A stretch of 63,367 nucleotides of DNA, counting the filler, from Octopus bimaculoides (taxonomy: Eukaryota), in assembly GCF_001194135.2 (NCBI RefSeq). It is 5 parts of 5 records of this genome, joined end to end, with 100 filler letters (N's around TTAATTAATTAA, not from the genome) between each part and the next. Parts side by side here need not be neighbours in the genome. Positions count along the whole stretch, not along the records: positions 41,595 to 57,719 come from NC_068995.1; 4 more parts are not named here. The stretch is one strand, 5' to 3'. Positions 46,987-53,778 of the stretch are shown here, piece after piece (position 1 is the first letter of the stretch; each line of letters opens with the position of its first letter). The notes beneath the pieces were generated by a model. The model was given only the letters and a program-made list of their open reading frames with translations, did not search any database and had not been told where the DNA came from. A program made the position numbers and the translations under genes.

Positions 46987-47353
46987 CTATTGGTGTTGTT
47001 CCCATGAATATTTTGCTAAATATCCTAAGCAAAACCAACCTGCATGGCAAAGCTGCAAAGTCACTGATGACCAATTCCTATAGACATTCATAGCATATAT
47101 AATTTGTTGATCAGTACTCATCAAGTTTTGGTTCAAAGCCCTTTTAACACTACTAATGTAGTCATCACAGAATCTTGTTAAGACATCATAACGTCCAAGG
47201 TTTGCACCACCAGCAACCCAAACAAGGTCTTTCCATATTATTTCTTTCAAAGGTATTTTCTGAAAATTACATTCTAAGCTGAAAGCCACACTTCTAAAGT
47301 CAAATCCTTTTGGAAGACTTAAGCCAAATTTTTTTGTTTTGTTTACTTCATAG
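46987..47353 (-). CDS. Terminal coding exon of an HtrL/YibB-like (WlaTC-type, putative glycosyltransferase) gene
   Basis: Acceptor tttctttttctctgtcttttttcag at 47355-47354; phase matches the upstream exon (CG|C = Arg); open to TAG at 46989-46987; encodes ...WVAGGANLGRYDVLTRFCDDY...LMSTDQQIIYAM..., resembling the GG.F.G and DQ motifs of the family. Confidence 0.88.
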
Positions 47354-48127
47354 CTGAAAAAAGACAGAGAAAAAGAAATAACATTAAATTAGCAAATCTG
47401 TTGTAGACAATATTGCACTTCAAAGTATAAAACCAATTTTCTGTTTAAAATATCAGGTAACTCAAACAAATTGCACGGTAAATGTTACAACTTTAGCAGC
47501 AAGAGTTCTGCTAACAGAGCCATCTTTGCATGCAACAAAGAGAATTTGGGAAGGTTACTAGCAACTGGCAAAGGTCCAGAAAACCCAGCCGAAATTGGGA
47601 ACTGGAAATGGGTGAGAGAGAGTTGGCATGCAGTGGAATGCATGAAAGCATCCTTTAATTTCGAGATGTGTTGCAGTAGGGATTAAGTAATTGGTTATTG
47701 TAGGTAACTTCCTACAAGTGTTGTATACAATAATAAATATATGTTCACCATATTCAGAAAGAATTTGGAATATAGAATATAGCCTGAACAGTAGAGATAG
47801 GTTAGAGAGAAAAGATAAATGATTTGCTTATTCCATTACTTTTTAACATTTTTTTCATTATTCTAGGCTTAACTATTTACTTTATTTTACTTGAATTCCA
47901 AATTTATTTTCCTTCTAACTCCATTATTACACCTTCTTGCATAGTTCATTACTATTTATTTTTTGATACTCTTAATTTTTTTAATTATTTGTATTTTCAA
48001 TTCTATAAAACCATTACTAAGTATATATTATTTAACCTATATAAATGTGTGTGTATCTCAGCAGATATATGGTTTTTGTTAGCATATATCACTTAAAGAA
48101 TTATGCCATTATTTCAAATCTATTATT

Positions 48128-48584
48128 AAGGCAGTGAGCTGGCAGAATCATTTGCATGTCAGACAAAATACTTACTCTCTTTTACTCTTTTTCTCTTTTA
48201 CTTGTTTCAGTCATTTGACTGTGGCCATGCTGGAGCACCGCCTTTAGTCGAATCAGATCGACCCCAGGACTTATTCTTTGTAAGCCAAGTACTTATTCTA
48301 TCGTTCTCTTTTGCCGAACCGCTAAGTTACGGGGACCTAAACACACCACCATCGGTTGTCAAGCNNNNNNNNNNNNNNNNNNNNNNNNNNNNNNNNNNNN
48401 NNNNNNNNNNNNNNNNNNNNNNNNNNNNNNNNNNNNNNNNNNNNNNNNNNNNNNNNNNNNNNNNNNNNNNNNNNNNNNNNNNNNNNNNNNNNNNNNNNNN
48501 NNNNNNNNNNNNNNNNNNNNNNNNNNNNNNNNNNNNNNNNNNNNNNNNNNNNNNNNATACACACACACACACACACACATATAG

Positions 48585-48617
<33 letters not shown>

Positions 48618-48915
48618 TACGACGGGCTTCTTTCAGTTTCTGTCTACCAAATCCACTCACAAGGCTTTGGTCGGCTTGAGGCGATAGTAGAAGACACTTG
48701 CCCAAGGTACCATGCAGTGGGACTGAATCCGAGACCATGTGGTTGGTAAGCAAGCTACTTACCACACACCCACTCGTGACATTTCTTCTGGCTTACTGTT
48801 CTGAATTCAAATACTACCAGGAATGATAAAATAAGTACCATTTGGGCACTGGGGTCAATATAATCAACTTATCCCTGCCCCTGAAATTGCTGGCCTTGAG
48901 CCAAAATTTGAAGCC
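48128..48915. mobile_element. Family B SINE (plus) split by a family A SINE (minus, about 48176-48775)
   Basis: The family B head stops at about 48175 and resumes at about 48776; the inserted family A copy retains most CpGs. Confidence 0.7.
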
Positions 48916-49760
48916 ATTATTTTATATCTATTATATAAAGAAAGGATGCATTCTGTGTCATCATGATGCCAGATTTTGATACCTTAATCAAGTTGAGTGT
49001 CAACTGTCACACTTTGAAGTTTTATTACTGAATAGTAATTGATCTCCAAACATTCTCTTAGCTGTAAGATTCAGCATAGAAATTGATGGTAATCATTTGA
49101 CCACTCCCATTCTGAAATAAGCTTACATTAGCACAGGGCTTAATCCTTGACAGGATTGATTTTCCAGTTAATGGTGCAGCTGATAGCTTTCTCTTTTCAA
49201 GCCCATATATAACTAGAGAGCTTCAGTTTTATGCTTGCTCCAGTCTCTAAAGGAGAAAATATGATTGTTAAACCTTGCCTTGAAGTTACCTTCCTTTAAA
49301 ACCTTGCTCATTCTAAAAATGCCAAAAGTGTCAAAAGTGAATCCCTTCTGGTTGCCACCAAGTATGTTTTAAAATGTTAGCCCTCTTCTCAATATGTACA
49401 ATAAGAACATCAGTATGGACCTCTTATCTTATACTTACATATCTTATACCCATTGATTTTATTTTGGTTTTATCTTTGTTTATTTTATCTTTTCATCTTT
49501 GGCCTTTTAACCAATTACAACTTTATTAATCAATTATATCTATTATGCATGAAGCTTATCACCACATATGTAGCTAATTAAATTTGCACATGGGAGGGGA
49601 ATGTAGATGTGGGCAAGTGTGTAGGGATGCATATGCTGTGTATATATATATATATATATAGATATGCAGGGCAGGGAATCATCAATTAGTAATAAAATTA
49701 ATAATTAACAATTCTGCCGGGTAGCTCAGTATGAAAAAAACCTTCTTCGGTAAATAATTT

Positions 49761-51110: not shown

Positions 51111-51240
51111 GATAGTATACATATACTCTTACTTTTATGTATTCTATTTTATTTTAGTATATTCTATTATATTATATTTTTATAAGTATATTCTGTTTCT
51201 CATATAATCCACACAGTATCTCAAAGACTAAAGCTTTAGT

Positions 51241-51631
51241 TGTTGTTGTTGTTGACACTCCGTCACTTACGACGTCGAAGGTTCCAGTTGATCCGATCAA
51301 CGGAACAGCCTGCTCGTGAAATTAACGTGCAAGTGGCTGAGCACTCCACAGACACATGTACCCATAATGTAGTTCTTGGGGATATTCAGCGTGACACAGT
51401 GTGACAAGGCTGACCCTTTGAATTACAGGCACAACAGAAACAAGAAGTAAGAGTGAGAGAAAGTTGTGGTGGAAGAGTATAGCAGGGTTTGCTACCATCC
51501 CCCACTGGAGCATTGTGGAGCTTTAGGTATTTTTGCTCAATAAACACTCACAATGCCCGGTCTCGGAATCAAAACCACGATCCTATGACCATGAGTCCGC
51601 TGCCCTAACCACTGGGCCATTGTGCCTCCAC
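51241..51631 (-). mobile_element. Full-length tRNA-derived SINE family C with (AAC)n tail and TSD
   Basis: Head GGAGGCACAATGGCCCAGTGGTTAGGGCAGCGGACTC...GGTTTTGATTCC; TSD AAAGCTTTAGT (51230-51240) / AAAGTTTTAGT (51632-51642). Confidence 0.85.
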
Positions 51632-52899
51632 AAAGTTTTAGTAAGGCAGAAAGAAAGACAAGAGTTCTGATATCTTCAGAAAATGGCTTTACTCTCCTCA
51701 ATGTTTAAAAGAATGAATATTGTCTACACAATTTTTCAATTAGATTGTCCATGAATGAATAAGAATATAATTAGACTTGTATTCTTTTAATTCAATTATC
51801 CTTTTCATTTGAGAAATCTAATTTCTGTGTAATTGGCAGAATCAGCAGGATAGAGAGGAAAGTGACAGTCAGTATTCAGCTAGGTCTCTTTCTGTTTTCG
51901 GTTCAAACTACATTAATGTTGACTTTAACTTTAACCCTTCCTGGAGTAAAAACAATAAAGTACCTGTCACATACTGAGATTGATATAACTGGTTTTACCT
52001 CTCTTCCTAAAATGTGTGATTCTATGTATTTGTTAGAAATAATTATCACCAGTCATTATATCACTATGTTTATTATTCTATTAAAAAGTCTAAATATGTT
52101 GTTTTGTTTGTGCCTCTGCTTATTGAACTAACAATCACAGATGAAGTCAATGAATTGGTGGGATCATTAGAATATAGGACAAAGCACCTTTTGGTATTCA
52201 GTCTGGCTTGCTATAGTTTAAGTTCAAATCCTACCAAGGTTGATGCTACCTTTCATTCTTTCAGTGTTGATAAAATATCAGTCTGAAGCAGTGGATTAGC
52301 AGAATTGCTAAAGTGTCAGACACGATAACAGCTCTTTATATTCTGAATTCATAAATGGTGGATTTCATTTGCTGGCCAGTTTAACACCACTCTCTGGTTG
52401 TGTTGTAAGAATTCAGGGAAGGTCTCTAATCTGAAGTTAATTCTATCTCCCTTTCTCTCACCAATAGCGAAGGCTCTAGAGGGTCAAAAGTATTGCTATT
52501 CCTTCTCTAATTAAGTATTAAAAAGGAAAAGAGAGCCTAAGTAAAGTAAACAGTGTGTTATAAAAAGTAAACTAAATAGTGTGTTATTCACTACACAAGA
52601 CATAGCACTGTTTTGGCAATTTATTCCTTAAAATATTTCTTTTAATTATTACTAAATAATATTGCTTAAACCTTGGGTCTAAACAATGACAAGCAATCAT
52701 ATGATCAAAGGTGATCCATTTATGACATTATGCCTTTTTTAAGGTGGTAAAGTAAGGATATGAAGATTTTGCTACTATTTCCAGCAGGTCAAACAATCAA
52801 GTAGAATTTCTCCTGGCTGGTTTTATTACCAAATAACTTGTCACCAAGGCACACGCATGCACACGCACACGCACACACACACACACACAATGAAATTTG

Positions 52900-53200
52900 A
52901 TAAATTAAGCTCCTAACAATTCATTCTATTATCTAAATATGGTGTTTGGTTTCTTGCTTTAGAGCAATGAACAATTTTGATTTCGTTGCACTTGAGGTAA
53001 ACAAATTGGTAAAGGCTTCTTAAATCTCGATTATATCCATTTATTATAACTTTTCTATTATTATGACTTCTCTGTAGATTAAATTTGTCATCTGCAAAAT
53101 GATAAACTATACTGTGTGATAGAATGTTATTCATTAATATATATACTTTAAGAAGAGTAATGGACCAAGGACAGAGCTTTGAGGAACCCCATAAATAAGT
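52900..53200 (-). mobile_element. CR1/L2-like LINE RT fragment in the intron
   Basis: GVPQSSVLGPLLFL and IVYHFADD motifs. Confidence 0.75.
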
Positions 53201-53311
53201 ATTTGAATTATAACCAAGTATAGAAATTTATATTAAATATATATAAATAAGTAGACAGACATAGGTACTGAATAAATAAAAACAATTATTATTTAAATAC
53301 ATAACACTTAC

Positions 53312-53778
53312 CGAAAATATCCAAAGTCAATCCACATAAAAAAGTTTGTGTGAAAATAATTCTGTTGGATAGACTTTTTGAGTAGCTCATATTTAGCATG
53401 CATCACACAAGAATAGTCAGGTATCACAGTGTTTGGATGGAATTTTGGATAATCAGCTTGACTGAATATTTTAGCAATTTGGGGTTTCAGACTAAATGCC
53501 CACAAGTCTGTTCGATTAACCAGGATCAATTTTGTTAAGTTATCTAAACTTGGTGATCGCAGTTTTTTAAACATTGAGAGAATCTCTGGAGAGTCTGTGA
53601 AGAAAACGACTGGATTGAGAATCCGAGAATAAACAGAACACCACTTTTTATATACATTGGGGTTTATGTGACTATTTCCACCCTTTCTAAAGGTGTCTAA
53701 TTGGAAATAAGCTGTAACTAGTGTCACATTTTCAGAATGTTCAAATGCTTTGAGTTTTTTCTTCATGTGCATTGGAAT
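53312..53778 (-). CDS. Main coding exon of the HtrL/YibB-like gene
   Basis: Acceptor ttttcttctgtttcag at 53780-53779; donor CG|GTAAGT at 53311; 467-nt open frame with NVTLVTAYF, YKKW, PVVFFTDS, YSCVMHAKYELL and NYFHTNFFMWIDFGYFR. Joined to the terminal exon it gives 275 aa counted from ATG 53772. Confidence 0.9.

What the first reader, a model, noticed from the sequence alone, without database searches (positions are those of the whole stretch)
46987..53778. Spliced animal gene for an HtrL/YibB-like putative glycosyltransferase of unknown function
Seen: two exons with canonical, phase-compatible splice sites join into an uninterrupted frame of at least 275 aa with the motifs TLVTAYF, FFTDS, AKYELL, WIDFG, AGG..LG and DQQ. 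Established: the HtrL_YibB family is named from a gene in the E. coli LPS-core locus, has homologues in Campylobacter and nematodes, and lacks a well-defined function. Inference: this is an intact, domesticated (intron-containing) cephalopod member, possibly a glycan-modifying enzyme using the WID motif for nucleotide-sugar/metal binding. Its patchy distribution raises the question of ancient horizontal transfer or lineage-specific expansion.
Basis: partly seen in the sequence, partly recalled or inferred. Interest (0 to 1): 0.72.

Follow-up and report, generated by a model that had tools for sequence, protein, structure and literature searches.

The report
Octopus HtrL-like putative Golgi glycosyltransferase gene
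This is an intact, spliced and already annotated Octopus bimaculoides gene (LOC106879582) for a membrane-anchored enzyme of the little-studied HtrL/YibB family, which most likely adds a sugar to glycans in the secretory pathway; it is an ordinary member of a family that is widespread in marine invertebrates.

Summary
On the minus strand, exon 53778-53312 joins exon 47353-46987 through canonical GT-AG sites in one frame of 277 aa. That protein passes the Pfam HtrL_YibB threshold (54 bits against a cut-off of 24), and the match runs across the junction. The piece is 100% identical to O. bimaculoides chromosome CM046615.1. The gene is RefSeq LOC106879582 (XP_014784703.2, 334 aa), whose model uses the same junction. 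Both assembly gaps sit inside the last intron, and a gap-free O. sinensis orthologue is collinear across them, so no coding sequence is lost. dN/dS against Argonauta is 0.11. An AlphaFold model (pLDDT 93) has a GT-A fold, and the closest solved structures are GT6 retaining glycosyltransferases. K186, W206-x-D208-x-G210 and Q295 are invariant, and D294 nearly so, across the sampled animal, bacterial and viral members. The family is common in molluscs, annelids, a nemertean and a cnidarian, so this is not a cephalopod-specific acquisition. No member has a known biochemical function. This is a known gene in a known family, and interest is low to moderate.

The parts
54909..54976 (-). Coding exon 2 (68 nt, starts in phase 1). 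It encodes the stem segment (V)KTSCFKSELNPKYLYMQPSEDV.
   Evidence: tblastn with the O. sinensis orthologue. Acceptor ccattag| and donor GTG|gtcagt. Identical to XP_014784703.2.
53779..54908 (-). Intron between coding exons 2 and 3 (1130 nt, GT...AG).
53312..53778 (-). Coding exon 3 (467 nt). It encodes the N-terminal half of the GT-A domain, including TLVTAYF, FFTDS, HAKY (K186) and WIDFG (D208). It ends inside the Arg213 codon (CG|).
47354..53311 (-). Intron between coding exons 3 and 4 (5958 nt as assembled). It contains both assembly gaps (48365-48556, 49874-50796), microsatellites and a 117-nt inverted repeat.
   Evidence: Canonical gtaagt...ttttcag. Collinear with the gap-free O. sinensis locus. 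Repeats.
46987..47353 (-). Coding exon 4 (367 nt including stop TAG at 46989-46987). It encodes the C-terminal half of the domain, including AGGANLG, TDQQ (D294-Q295) and WFCLGY.
53320..53334 (-). WIDFG motif (P0061 residues 206-210). W, D and G are invariant family-wide. It is the proposed equivalent of the GT-A DXD motif.
47104..47115 (-). TDQQ motif (residues 293-296). Q295 is invariant in 34 of 34 members and D294 in 33 of 34. It is the proposed equivalent of D-E in GT6 and Q189 in GT8 at the donor-sugar site.
   Evidence: literature PMC3731257

Best explanation
The finding is the 3' three-quarters of Octopus bimaculoides gene LOC106879582, a four-coding-exon gene for a 334-aa type II membrane protein.

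Domain layout. A short basic cytoplasmic tail is followed by a single N-terminal signal-anchor helix (residues about 20-34, encoded by exon 1, which lies outside the piece), a roughly 40-residue stem, and a roughly 260-residue lumenal catalytic domain of the HtrL/YibB (WlaTC/HtrL) family.

Shown here. The gene structure, the family membership, the GT-A fold of the model, purifying selection, and the set of invariant residues.

Inferred. The protein is a Golgi/ER-resident Leloir glycosyltransferase. Its N-terminal Rossmann-like half (TxxTAYF strand, Y100/W103, N112) binds a nucleotide sugar. D208 of W-x-D-x-G occupies the position of the first Asp of the DXD motif. The invariant basic residue K186 and the nearly invariant R213 help neutralise the diphosphate, with or without a divalent cation. 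D294-Q295 sit at the donor-sugar anomeric centre, as D302-E303 do in GT6 and Q189 does in GT8. The most likely reaction is therefore a retaining (alpha-) transfer onto an unidentified glycoprotein or glycolipid acceptor.

The donor, acceptor and stereochemistry are not known for any member of the family.
For: Gene and identity. The piece is 100% identical to GCA_001194135.2 chromosome CM046615.1. The translation equals XP_014784703.2 residues 36-334.

Family. Pfam PF09612 scores 54.3 bits against a cut-off of 24.1. All 51 aligned homologues hit only PF09612 as a shared family. E. coli K-12 HtrL aligns over 268 aa at E 5e-9 and shares TAYF, WIDFGY, GGA and DQ. NCBI names the bacterial members 'WlaTC/HtrL family glycosyltransferase'.

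Fold. The AF2 model has pLDDT 93.2 and pTM 0.91. Foldseek against the PDB gives 143 hits at E<=1e-3. The top 50 are all GT6 GT-A enzymes: BoGT6a, human GTA/GTB and bovine alpha3GalT (probability 1.00, TM 0.43/0.51-0.57). Giant-virus proteins, some annotated as glycosyltransferases, match at TMq 0.59-0.67.

Invariant residues. K186, W206, D208, G210 and Q295 are conserved in 34 of 34 members, and D294 in 33 of 34, across animals, Verrucomicrobia, enterobacteria and viral contigs. hhalign places WIDFGY-FR on GTA CVDVDMEFR and VWVAGGANLG on YYLGGFFGG (weak).

Topology. Hydropathy peaks at residues 18-35, and the lumenal part carries five N-x-S/T sequons. The same N-terminal anchor is seen in most full-length animal homologues.

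Selection. dN/dS is 0.11 against Argonauta and 0.26-0.33 against O. sinensis. The intron position and phase are conserved in four genes.

Context supporting glycan assembly. In a Verrucomicrobia MAG the domain is fused to GT31, GT11 and FkbM-methyltransferase domains. E. coli htrL lies next to the waa LPS-core genes.
Against: No member of the family has a demonstrated activity, donor or acceptor (literature searches).

The canonical DXD is absent, because the motif is D-x-G.

Similarity to GT6 is structural only. The TM-scores are moderate, there is no Pfam GT6 hit, and hhalign gives a probability of only 1.5%.

No transcript or junction reads for this gene could be examined. Exon 1 and its anchor are not in the piece.
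Confidence: 0.7

Rival explanations
1. The protein has a GT-A-like fold but is not a Leloir glycosyltransferase. It would transfer another group (for example a sugar-phosphate, or another nucleotide-activated substituent) or act on a non-glycan acceptor.
For: The DXD motif is non-canonical (D-x-G). There is no sequence-level link to any CAZy GT family. The bacterial members sit in LPS/LOS loci that also encode non-sugar modifications (PMC4172580).
Against: The best structural matches are all bona fide nucleotide-sugar glycosyltransferases. The domain is fused to GT31 and GT11 domains in Verrucomicrobia. The D-Q pair resembles retaining GT-A active sites.
Confidence: 0.15
2. The protein is a catalytically inert secreted or lectin-like protein. 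It could, for example, be a mucus or immune-related factor that kept the fold but not the chemistry.
For: The C. elegans family member T11F9.12 is described as a large secreted protein, and its authors speculate on an immune role (PMC8989417). A snail mucus peptide matched an HtrL_YibB protein (PMC11206429).
Against: The full set of family-wide invariant polar residues (K186, D208, D294, Q295; R213 in 31 of 34 sampled members) is retained. The protein has a signal anchor rather than a cleavable signal. Purifying selection is strong. Golgi glycosyltransferases are commonly shed into secretions, which could explain the mucus peptide.
Confidence: 0.08
3. The gene is a decaying or redundant duplicate (pseudogene in the making), or an annotation artefact created by scaffolding across gaps.
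For: A 96-97% identical paralogue lies about 81 kb away. dN/dS between the paralogues is 0.48, based on only 12 differences. Four assembly gaps lie within the gene.
Against: The reading frame and all splice sites are intact. dN/dS against Argonauta is 0.11. The locus is collinear with a gap-free orthologous locus. The RefSeq model is identical.
Confidence: 0.04
4. The gene is a recent horizontal transfer into cephalopods, or bacterial contamination.
For: The family was first defined in bacteria. Verrucomicrobial domains cluster with the animal clade in an NJ tree (bootstrap 0.915).
Against: The gene has spliceosomal introns, octopus repeats in those introns and a chromosome-scale context. Orthologues occur in Octopus and Argonauta, with further close relatives in contigs from unidentified sequencing runs. 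Paralogue-rich families at 35-45% identity occur in gastropods, bivalves, annelids, a nemertean and a cnidarian. The best bacterial identity is only 24-28%.
Confidence: 0.02

Closest known systems
E. coli HtrL/YibB and the bacterial WlaTC/HtrL family (Pfam PF09612, TIGR02192)
   Same: Homologous over essentially the whole catalytic domain (24% identity, E 5e-9). Both share TxxTAYF, the invariant Lys, WIDFGY, GG and DQ, and are of similar length. Both are functionally uncharacterised and associated with glycan biosynthesis.
   Different: The octopus protein scores far below the equivalog cut-off (61 against 265 bits). It also has an N-terminal signal anchor, a stem, N-glycosylation sequons and spliceosomal introns, and it belongs to a distinct animal-type clade carrying the HAKY and PNT motifs. 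The bacterial proteins are soluble, about 285 aa long, and encoded next to LPS/LOS core genes.
CAZy GT6 retaining GT-A glycosyltransferases (human ABO GTA/GTB, bovine alpha-1,3-GalT, Bacteroides BoGT6a)
   Same: They are the closest solved structures (Foldseek probability 1.00, E 2e-6, about 265 aligned columns). They have the same type II Golgi topology in animals (my own knowledge, not tested here). Motifs correspond in order: FTDQP/FTDSP, CVDVD/WIDFG, LGGFFGG/AGGANLG, HDES/TDQQ (verified GTA sequence; weak hhalign).
   Different: There is no sequence-level family membership (no Pfam Glyco_transf_6 hit). TM-scores are only 0.43-0.57. The motif is D-x-G instead of D-x-D, and Gln stands where GT6 has the catalytic-site Glu.
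CAZy GT8 retaining enzymes (e.g. Neisseria LgtC)
   Same: In LgtC, Gln189 is the polar residue nearest the donor anomeric carbon (PMC3731257). In my recollection it follows Asp188, giving an Asp-Gln pair (not checked here). The HtrL family has a conserved D294-Q295 pair (Q295 invariant, D294 in 33 of 34).
   Different: No GT8 structure appears among the 50 Foldseek matches listed (all GT6), and there is no sequence match. The equivalence is an inference, not a superposition.
C. elegans HTRL-1 (T11F9.12)
   Same: An animal protein carrying PF09612 (PMC8989417).
   Different: It is 736 aa long, described as secreted and nematode-specific, and used as a marker of pharyngeal neurons. It was not recovered among the close relatives here, and the octopus protein belongs to the compact 300-380-aa spiralian/cnidarian type.

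Membership tests
HtrL_YibB (Pfam PF09612) | Score above the Pfam gathering threshold over most of the profile | tested here: met
   54.3 bits against a cut-off of 24.1, E 2e-14, profile positions 2-259 of 267. All 51 aligned homologues also match.
HtrL_YibB (Pfam PF09612) | Direct pairwise homology to the founding member, E. coli K-12 HtrL | tested here: met
   BLASTP E 5e-9, 24% identity over 268 aa. The htrL gene was taken from NC_000913.3.
HtrL_YibB (Pfam PF09612) | Family-wide invariant residues (TxxTAY, Lys, WxDxG, GG, DQ, WF) | tested here: met
   All are present in the window protein. K186, W206, D208, G210 and Q295 are conserved in 34 of 34 members.
Protein YibB equivalog (NCBIfam TIGR02192 / NF008462) | Score above the equivalog cut-off, implying the same function as enterobacterial YibB | tested here: not met
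   61.4 bits against 264.9, and 50.4 against 342. The protein is a distant subfamily, not an equivalog.
Protein YibB equivalog (NCBIfam TIGR02192 / NF008462) | Location in an LPS/LOS core biosynthesis locus | tested here: not met
   This is an animal nuclear gene. The upstream neighbour is a coatomer-epsilon gene.
GT-A fold nucleotide-sugar glycosyltransferases | Single Rossmann-like alpha/beta/alpha domain superposable on solved GT-A enzymes | tested here: met
   The model has pLDDT 93.2. There are 143 PDB matches at E<=1e-3, and the top 50 listed are all GT-A (GT6) enzymes at probability 1.00.
GT-A fold nucleotide-sugar glycosyltransferases | DXD metal-binding motif after the central beta-strand | tested here: inconclusive
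   The motif is W-I-D-F-G. The first Asp is invariant, and the second position is an invariant Gly. It aligns to the DVD of GTA only in a weak hhalign hit.
GT-A fold nucleotide-sugar glycosyltransferases | Nucleotide-sugar-dependent glycosyl transfer | not testable with these tools
   This requires biochemistry. No characterised member was found in the literature.
CAZy GT6 | Sequence membership (Pfam Glyco_transf_6) | tested here: not met
   No hit even at E<=1. A profile search of PDB sequences found no glycosyltransferase.
CAZy GT6 | Catalytic-site Glu (E303 of GTA) and D-x-D (or the N-x-N variant) | tested here: inconclusive
   The corresponding motifs are read as D-Q and D-x-G. The equivalence was not confirmed by 3D superposition.
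Type II Golgi membrane glycosyltransferase architecture | Short cytoplasmic tail, single N-terminal signal anchor, stem, lumenal catalytic domain | tested here: met
   The hydropathy maximum is 2.9 at residues 18-35 of the full RefSeq protein, and the lumenal part has five sequons. Most full-length homologues share this layout. Exon 1 lies outside the piece. Subcellular localisation itself was not tested.

The most novel reading that the evidence does not exclude
The compact animal HtrL-like proteins would form an unrecognised family of retaining Golgi glycosyltransferases, distantly related to GT6 and GT8. These comprise several hundred 50%-identity clusters across molluscs, annelids, nemerteans and cnidarians. 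They would use a single-Asp W-x-D-x-G motif plus invariant Lys/Arg in place of a classical DXD, and would build invertebrate-specific glycan epitopes. The same animal-type domain has been exchanged with Verrucomicrobia (as part of giant multi-GT fusion proteins) and with giant viruses, and the direction of transfer is unresolved.
Probability: 0.3. Interest if true: 0.5.

Novelty: new member of a known kind. Interest (0 to 1): 0.27.

Why it matters
The gene itself is already in RefSeq and UniProt with its Pfam domain, so this window discovers nothing new.

The modest value lies at family level. HtrL/YibB has had no assigned activity since the family was first defined from E. coli. A recent paper still states that, outside nematodes, the domain is found only in a bacterial protein (PMC8989417).

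The data here add three things.
- There is a large, conserved animal-type clade with classical Golgi-enzyme architecture.
- A confident GT-A model is closest to retaining GT6 enzymes.
- A short list of invariant residues (K186, D208, D294, Q295, plus nearly invariant R213) makes a simple mutational and donor-screening test possible.

If the activity were defined, it would annotate thousands of proteins in bacterial LPS/LOS loci, giant viruses and invertebrates.

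Tried and rejected
Searches that gave nothing useful.
- Sequence searches of the PDB with the protein and with the 51-sequence profile found no relevant hit. The only matches were acetyl-CoA synthase at E 1.2, which is noise.
- Pfam at E<=1 over all 51 homologues gave no second shared family.
- hhalign of the profile against the verified human GTA sequence gave only a 75-column alignment at probability 1.5%. 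I use it as a lead for motif correspondence, not as proof.
- The exact-protein look-up for O. sinensis P0001 was not on record. I used the second O. sinensis copy, P0068, instead.
- No transcript contig for the window gene itself could be found. The only contig on record is the genome, so the splice junction rests on conservation and the RefSeq model, not on reads.
- A bacterial promoter/terminator scan downstream of the stop codon is irrelevant to an animal gene and was discarded.
- Pfam scans of retroelement-like ORFs in the flanks gave only sub-threshold aspartyl-protease hits.

Ideas rejected.
- A hidden exon in the gaps is rejected, because orthologues align across the junction without insertion.
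- Contamination or recent HGT is rejected, because of the introns, the repeats and the orthologues.
- Filing the protein as GT6 is rejected, because there is no sequence membership.

Caveat on the tree. The NJ tree is a rough distance tree on 268 columns. It should not be over-read for the position of the long Verrucomicrobia and viral branches.

Full report
**1. Observation**

ORF listing and direct reading of the minus strand show a 154-aa open frame at 53772-53308. It is preceded by a splice acceptor (ttctgtttcag|ATTCCA at 53778) and ends in CG|gtaagt at 53312. A second frame begins after tcttttttcag| at 47353 and runs to TAG at 46989-46987. Joining 53778..53312 to 47353..46987 gives 834 nt and 277 aa with no stop.

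The 277-aa product matches Pfam HtrL_YibB at E 2e-14. The score is 54.3 bits against a gathering cut-off of 24.1. The match covers residues 17-263 and profile positions 2-259 of 267, so a single domain alignment runs straight across the proposed junction.

**2. Identity of the locus and full gene structure**

The best database relative is O. sinensis LOC115220341 (94% identity). Its 90% cluster contains O. bimaculoides XP_014784703.2, 'uncharacterized protein LOC106879582' (P0061, 334 aa), and UniProt A0A0L8G2V5. The genomic locus of P0061 is L001, from GCA_001194135.2 chromosome CM046615.1. It is 100% identical to the whole piece, including the positions of the N gaps. The translation of the window exons equals residues 36-334 of P0061.

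tblastn revealed an additional 68-nt exon at 54976..54909 (acceptor ccattag|, donor GTG|gtcagt). It encodes (V)KTSCFKSELNPKYLYMQPSEDV and joins in frame to 53778. Coding exon 1 encodes MRMLKCWNTKSNLLLQRHRVAVIILIVILITLWQ plus one nucleotide. It lies at L001:10001-10103, about 2.6 kb beyond the end of the piece and behind another gap. It is itself preceded by an acceptor site, so a 5'-UTR exon exists further upstream. The gene therefore has four coding exons.

**3. Assembly gaps**

Gaps 48365-48556 and 49874-50796 are both inside the intron 47354-53311. blastn of this interval against the gap-free O. sinensis locus L024 gives collinear, same-strand blocks in three places.
- Before the first gap in the gene's direction of transcription (window 49874-50796).
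- Between the two gaps.
- After the second gap (window 48365-48556).

The proteins of four genes align across ...WIDFGYFR|YEVNKT... without insertion. These genes are the two O. bimaculoides paralogues, O. sinensis LOC115220539 and the Argonauta hians gene. The intron sits at the same position and phase (CG|gt...ag|C or G) in all four. The gaps therefore do not affect continuity or frame and do not hide coding sequence.

**4. Is the gene functional?**

I ran a Nei-Gojobori analysis on exons 3 and 4 (about 276 codons).

| Comparison | dN/dS | dS |
|---|---|---|
| A. hians | 0.11 | about 1.2 (near saturation; the direction is clear) |
| O. sinensis LOC115220539 | 0.33 | 0.10 |
| Own paralogue LOC106879588 | 0.48 | 0.025 (only 12 differences) |

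The reading frame and all splice sites are intact. I could not examine RNA-seq. The only contig on record for the exact protein is the genome. A 53-57% identical relative (P0005) occurs as an uninterrupted ORF on contigs of about 1.3 kb from three independent sequencing runs. That is consistent with mRNA, but the species is unknown.

**5. Family and fold**

Direct BLASTP against E. coli K-12 HtrL gives 24% identity over 268 aa at E 5e-9. The E. coli gene is b3618, fetched from NC_000913.3, where it lies beside rfaD-waaF-waaC-waaL. The two proteins share TAYF, WIDFGY, GGA and DQ. The NCBIfam equivalog models are hit far below their cut-offs (61 against 265 bits). The octopus protein is thus a distant subfamily, not a functional equivalog of YibB.

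No solved structure is detectable by sequence, even with a 51-sequence profile. An AlphaFold2 model built on that alignment is confident (pLDDT 93.2, pTM 0.91) and shows alternating strands and helices. Foldseek against the PDB returns 143 matches at E<=1e-3. The top 50 are all GT6 retaining GT-A glycosyltransferases.
- Bacteroides BoGT6a (E 2e-6, TM 0.43/0.51-0.57).
- Human blood-group GTA/GTB.
- Bovine alpha-1,3-galactosyltransferase.

Against predicted viral structures, the best matches are Pithovirus, Bodo saltans virus, Solumvirus and an iridovirus. Their TMq is 0.59-0.67, and two of them carry glycosyltransferase annotations. Membership of GT6 does not hold at sequence level.

**6. Active-site inference**

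I aligned 34 diverse members: 22 animal sequences, 2 Verrucomicrobia, 5 enterobacterial or Acinetobacter sequences, and 5 from viral contigs.
- Strictly invariant: K186 (HAKY), W206, D208, G210 (WxDxG) and Q295.
- Nearly invariant: D294, T76/T79/A80 (TxxTAYF), Y100, G261, W319 and R213.
- Not conserved family-wide: the Asp of FFTDS.

I recalled the human GTA catalytic-domain sequence and verified it residue for residue against PDB 1LZ0/1WSZ. hhalign of the family profile against it gives only a weak alignment (probability 1.5%). That alignment nevertheless puts WIDFGY-FR on CVDVDMEFR and VWVAGGANLG on YYLGGFFGG. This matches the motif order I expected: FTDQP/FTDSP, DVD/DFG, GGFFGG/AGGANLG, HDES/TDQQ.

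In retaining GT-A enzymes, D211/D213 (GTA) and D103/D105 (LgtC) ligate the metal. The polar residue nearest the donor C1 is E303 in GTA and Q189 in LgtC (PMC3731257). I therefore infer three points.
- D208 is the single remaining DXD carboxylate.
- K186 and R213 contribute to diphosphate binding.
- D294-Q295 line the donor-sugar site, which favours a retaining mechanism.

These equivalences are inferences. I had no access to the model coordinates for a superposition.

**7. Topology**

The full RefSeq protein has a basic N-terminus, one strongly hydrophobic segment (Kyte-Doolittle 15-residue mean 2.9 at residues 18-35), and five N-x-S/T sequons in the remainder. Most full-length animal homologues have the same N-terminal anchor. 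This is the standard type II architecture of Golgi glycosyltransferases.

**8. Distribution and origin**

A profile search lists only animal or unlabelled environmental proteins among its best 120 hits.
- Cephalopods.
- Many gastropods: Lottia, Haliotis, Biomphalaria, Elysia, Littorina, Babylonia, Nucella.
- Bivalves: Pecten, Mizuhopecten, Crassostrea, Mytilus, Mya, Dreissena, Pinctada.
- Annelids: Helobdella, Capitella.
- The nemertean Lineus.
- The cnidarian Exaiptasia.

Several of these are already named 'protein HtrL(-like)', and many species have several copies. An exhaustive HMMER scan of 1.84 billion cluster representatives finds 3154 proteins at E<=1e-3, 1189 at E<=1e-10 and 287 at E<=1e-30.

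O. bimaculoides has at least three genes.
- LOC106879582, the gene in this window.
- LOC106879588, about 81 kb away on the same chromosome in convergent orientation, with the same four-exon structure.
- The 43% identical LOC106877989, on a contig of different length and so apparently elsewhere in the genome.

The Pecten and Lineus genes are single-exon, and the Exaiptasia catalytic domain lies on one exon. The intron after WIDFGYFR is therefore a cephalopod (octopod) feature.

A pattern-limited scan of bacterial genomes found animal-type domains (27-28% identity, carrying the HAKY motif) in two Verrucomicrobia MAGs. In one of them (L003) the domain ends a 1364-aa protein that also carries GT31, GT11 and FkbM-methyltransferase domains. 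In a rough NJ tree, animals plus these Verrucomicrobia domains form a clade (bootstrap 0.915). That clade is separate from enterobacterial and Acinetobacter HtrL and from the viral-contig sequences. Animal monophyly excluding Verrucomicrobia is not supported (bootstrap 0.145).

I draw two conclusions. The gene is not a recent acquisition by cephalopods, because the family is old in Spiralia and Cnidaria. An ancient inter-domain transfer, in either direction, remains open.

**9. Literature**

I found no biochemical characterisation of any HtrL/YibB/WlaTC protein.
- Acinetobacter OC-locus papers list it as an uncharacterised LOS-associated protein (PMC4172580).
- A coral genomics paper lists the domain in its tables of domain distribution (PMC6214176).
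- A snail-mucus proteomics paper matched one peptide to an HtrL_YibB protein (PMC11206429).
- The C. elegans paper on ceh-34 names T11F9.12 htrl-1. It states that, outside nematodes, the domain occurs only in a bacterial protein (PMC8989417). One search shows that statement to be outdated.

**10. Verdict**

The gene and its family assignment already exist in public annotation. It is an ordinary member of a known but uncharacterised family. The most likely function is a Golgi GT-A glycosyltransferase, probably retaining. Overall confidence in that reading is about 0.7, and lower for the stereochemistry.

Noticed in passing
window 46987-47353 and 53312-53778, compared with L002 and L024: The two nearby Octopus paralogues show concerted evolution. 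Exons 1-2 and the deep intron blocks group by orthology: 582 with O. sinensis 539, sharing a 2-aa deletion, and 588 with 341. The catalytic exons 3-4 instead group by species. O. sinensis 539 against 341 is 277/278 identical, O. bimaculoides 582 against 588 is 269/278 (dS 0.025), and between species the figure is 258-264/278 (dS about 0.10). This implies gene conversion confined to exons 3-4 and a few hundred nucleotides of flanking intron.
   Followed up: partly
window 49757-49873 and 50955-51071: A 117-nt inverted repeat, 97% complementary, has its left arm directly against assembly gap 49874-50796. It is either a foldback or hairpin element that broke the assembly, or a palindromic scaffolding artefact.
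   Followed up: no
window 46613-46700, 48557-48640, 51050-51120, 57560-57640: Three of the four gaps in the piece have (TA)n/(CA)n microsatellite tracts at or near an edge (directly at 46613 and 48557, about 250 nt inside 50797). After the tracts at 46613 and 48557 comes a shared GACRGGCTT... sequence, which suggests a recurrent SINE-like repeat that the assembler could not cross. A further microsatellite lies at 57560-57640.
   Followed up: no
window 43016-44919 (+) and 55400-56300 (-): Broken retroelement-like ORFs lie downstream of the gene and in the intron between coding exons 1 and 2. The first block is G+C-rich and looks gag-like, with a DTGCTTT aspartyl-protease motif and an RT-like ORF. 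The second carries RT-like peptides. Only sub-threshold Pfam aspartyl-protease hits were obtained.
   Followed up: partly
L003:1779-5873 (Verrucomicrobia MAG JAFLEH010000005.1): A 1364-aa bacterial protein fuses Galactosyl_T (GT31), GT11 fucosyltransferase-like, FkbM methyltransferase and an animal-type HtrL domain, and lies next to a phage-type integrase. It clusters with the animal clade in the NJ tree and is a candidate for inter-domain transfer.
   Followed up: partly
P0067 (O. vulgaris CAI9734058.1, 621 aa): This gene model fuses the HtrL-like protein to a polypeptide-GalNAc-transferase-like (GT2/GT27) domain. The most likely explanation is a merged prediction with a neighbouring glycosyltransferase gene. 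If so, two glycosylation genes are adjacent in Octopus.
   Followed up: no
P0007/P0008 (O. sinensis LOC115210785): The stem region of this distant paralogue contains a short pyruvate-kinase barrel fragment (KIIAVAQDTKGPEIRTG; Pfam PK E 9e-7). It is either an exon captured from a PK gene or an annotation artefact.
   Followed up: no
L027 (Pecten maximus), L029 (Lineus longissimus), L026 (Exaiptasia): The homologous genes are single-exon in the scallop and the nemertean, and the catalytic domain is a single exon in the anemone. The intron that splits the octopus catalytic domain is therefore a lineage-specific gain shared with Argonauta.
   Followed up: partly
literature (PMC8989417): The published statement that PF09612 occurs, outside nematodes, only in a bacterial protein is contradicted by the hundreds of mollusc, annelid, nemertean and cnidarian proteins found here.
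   Followed up: yes
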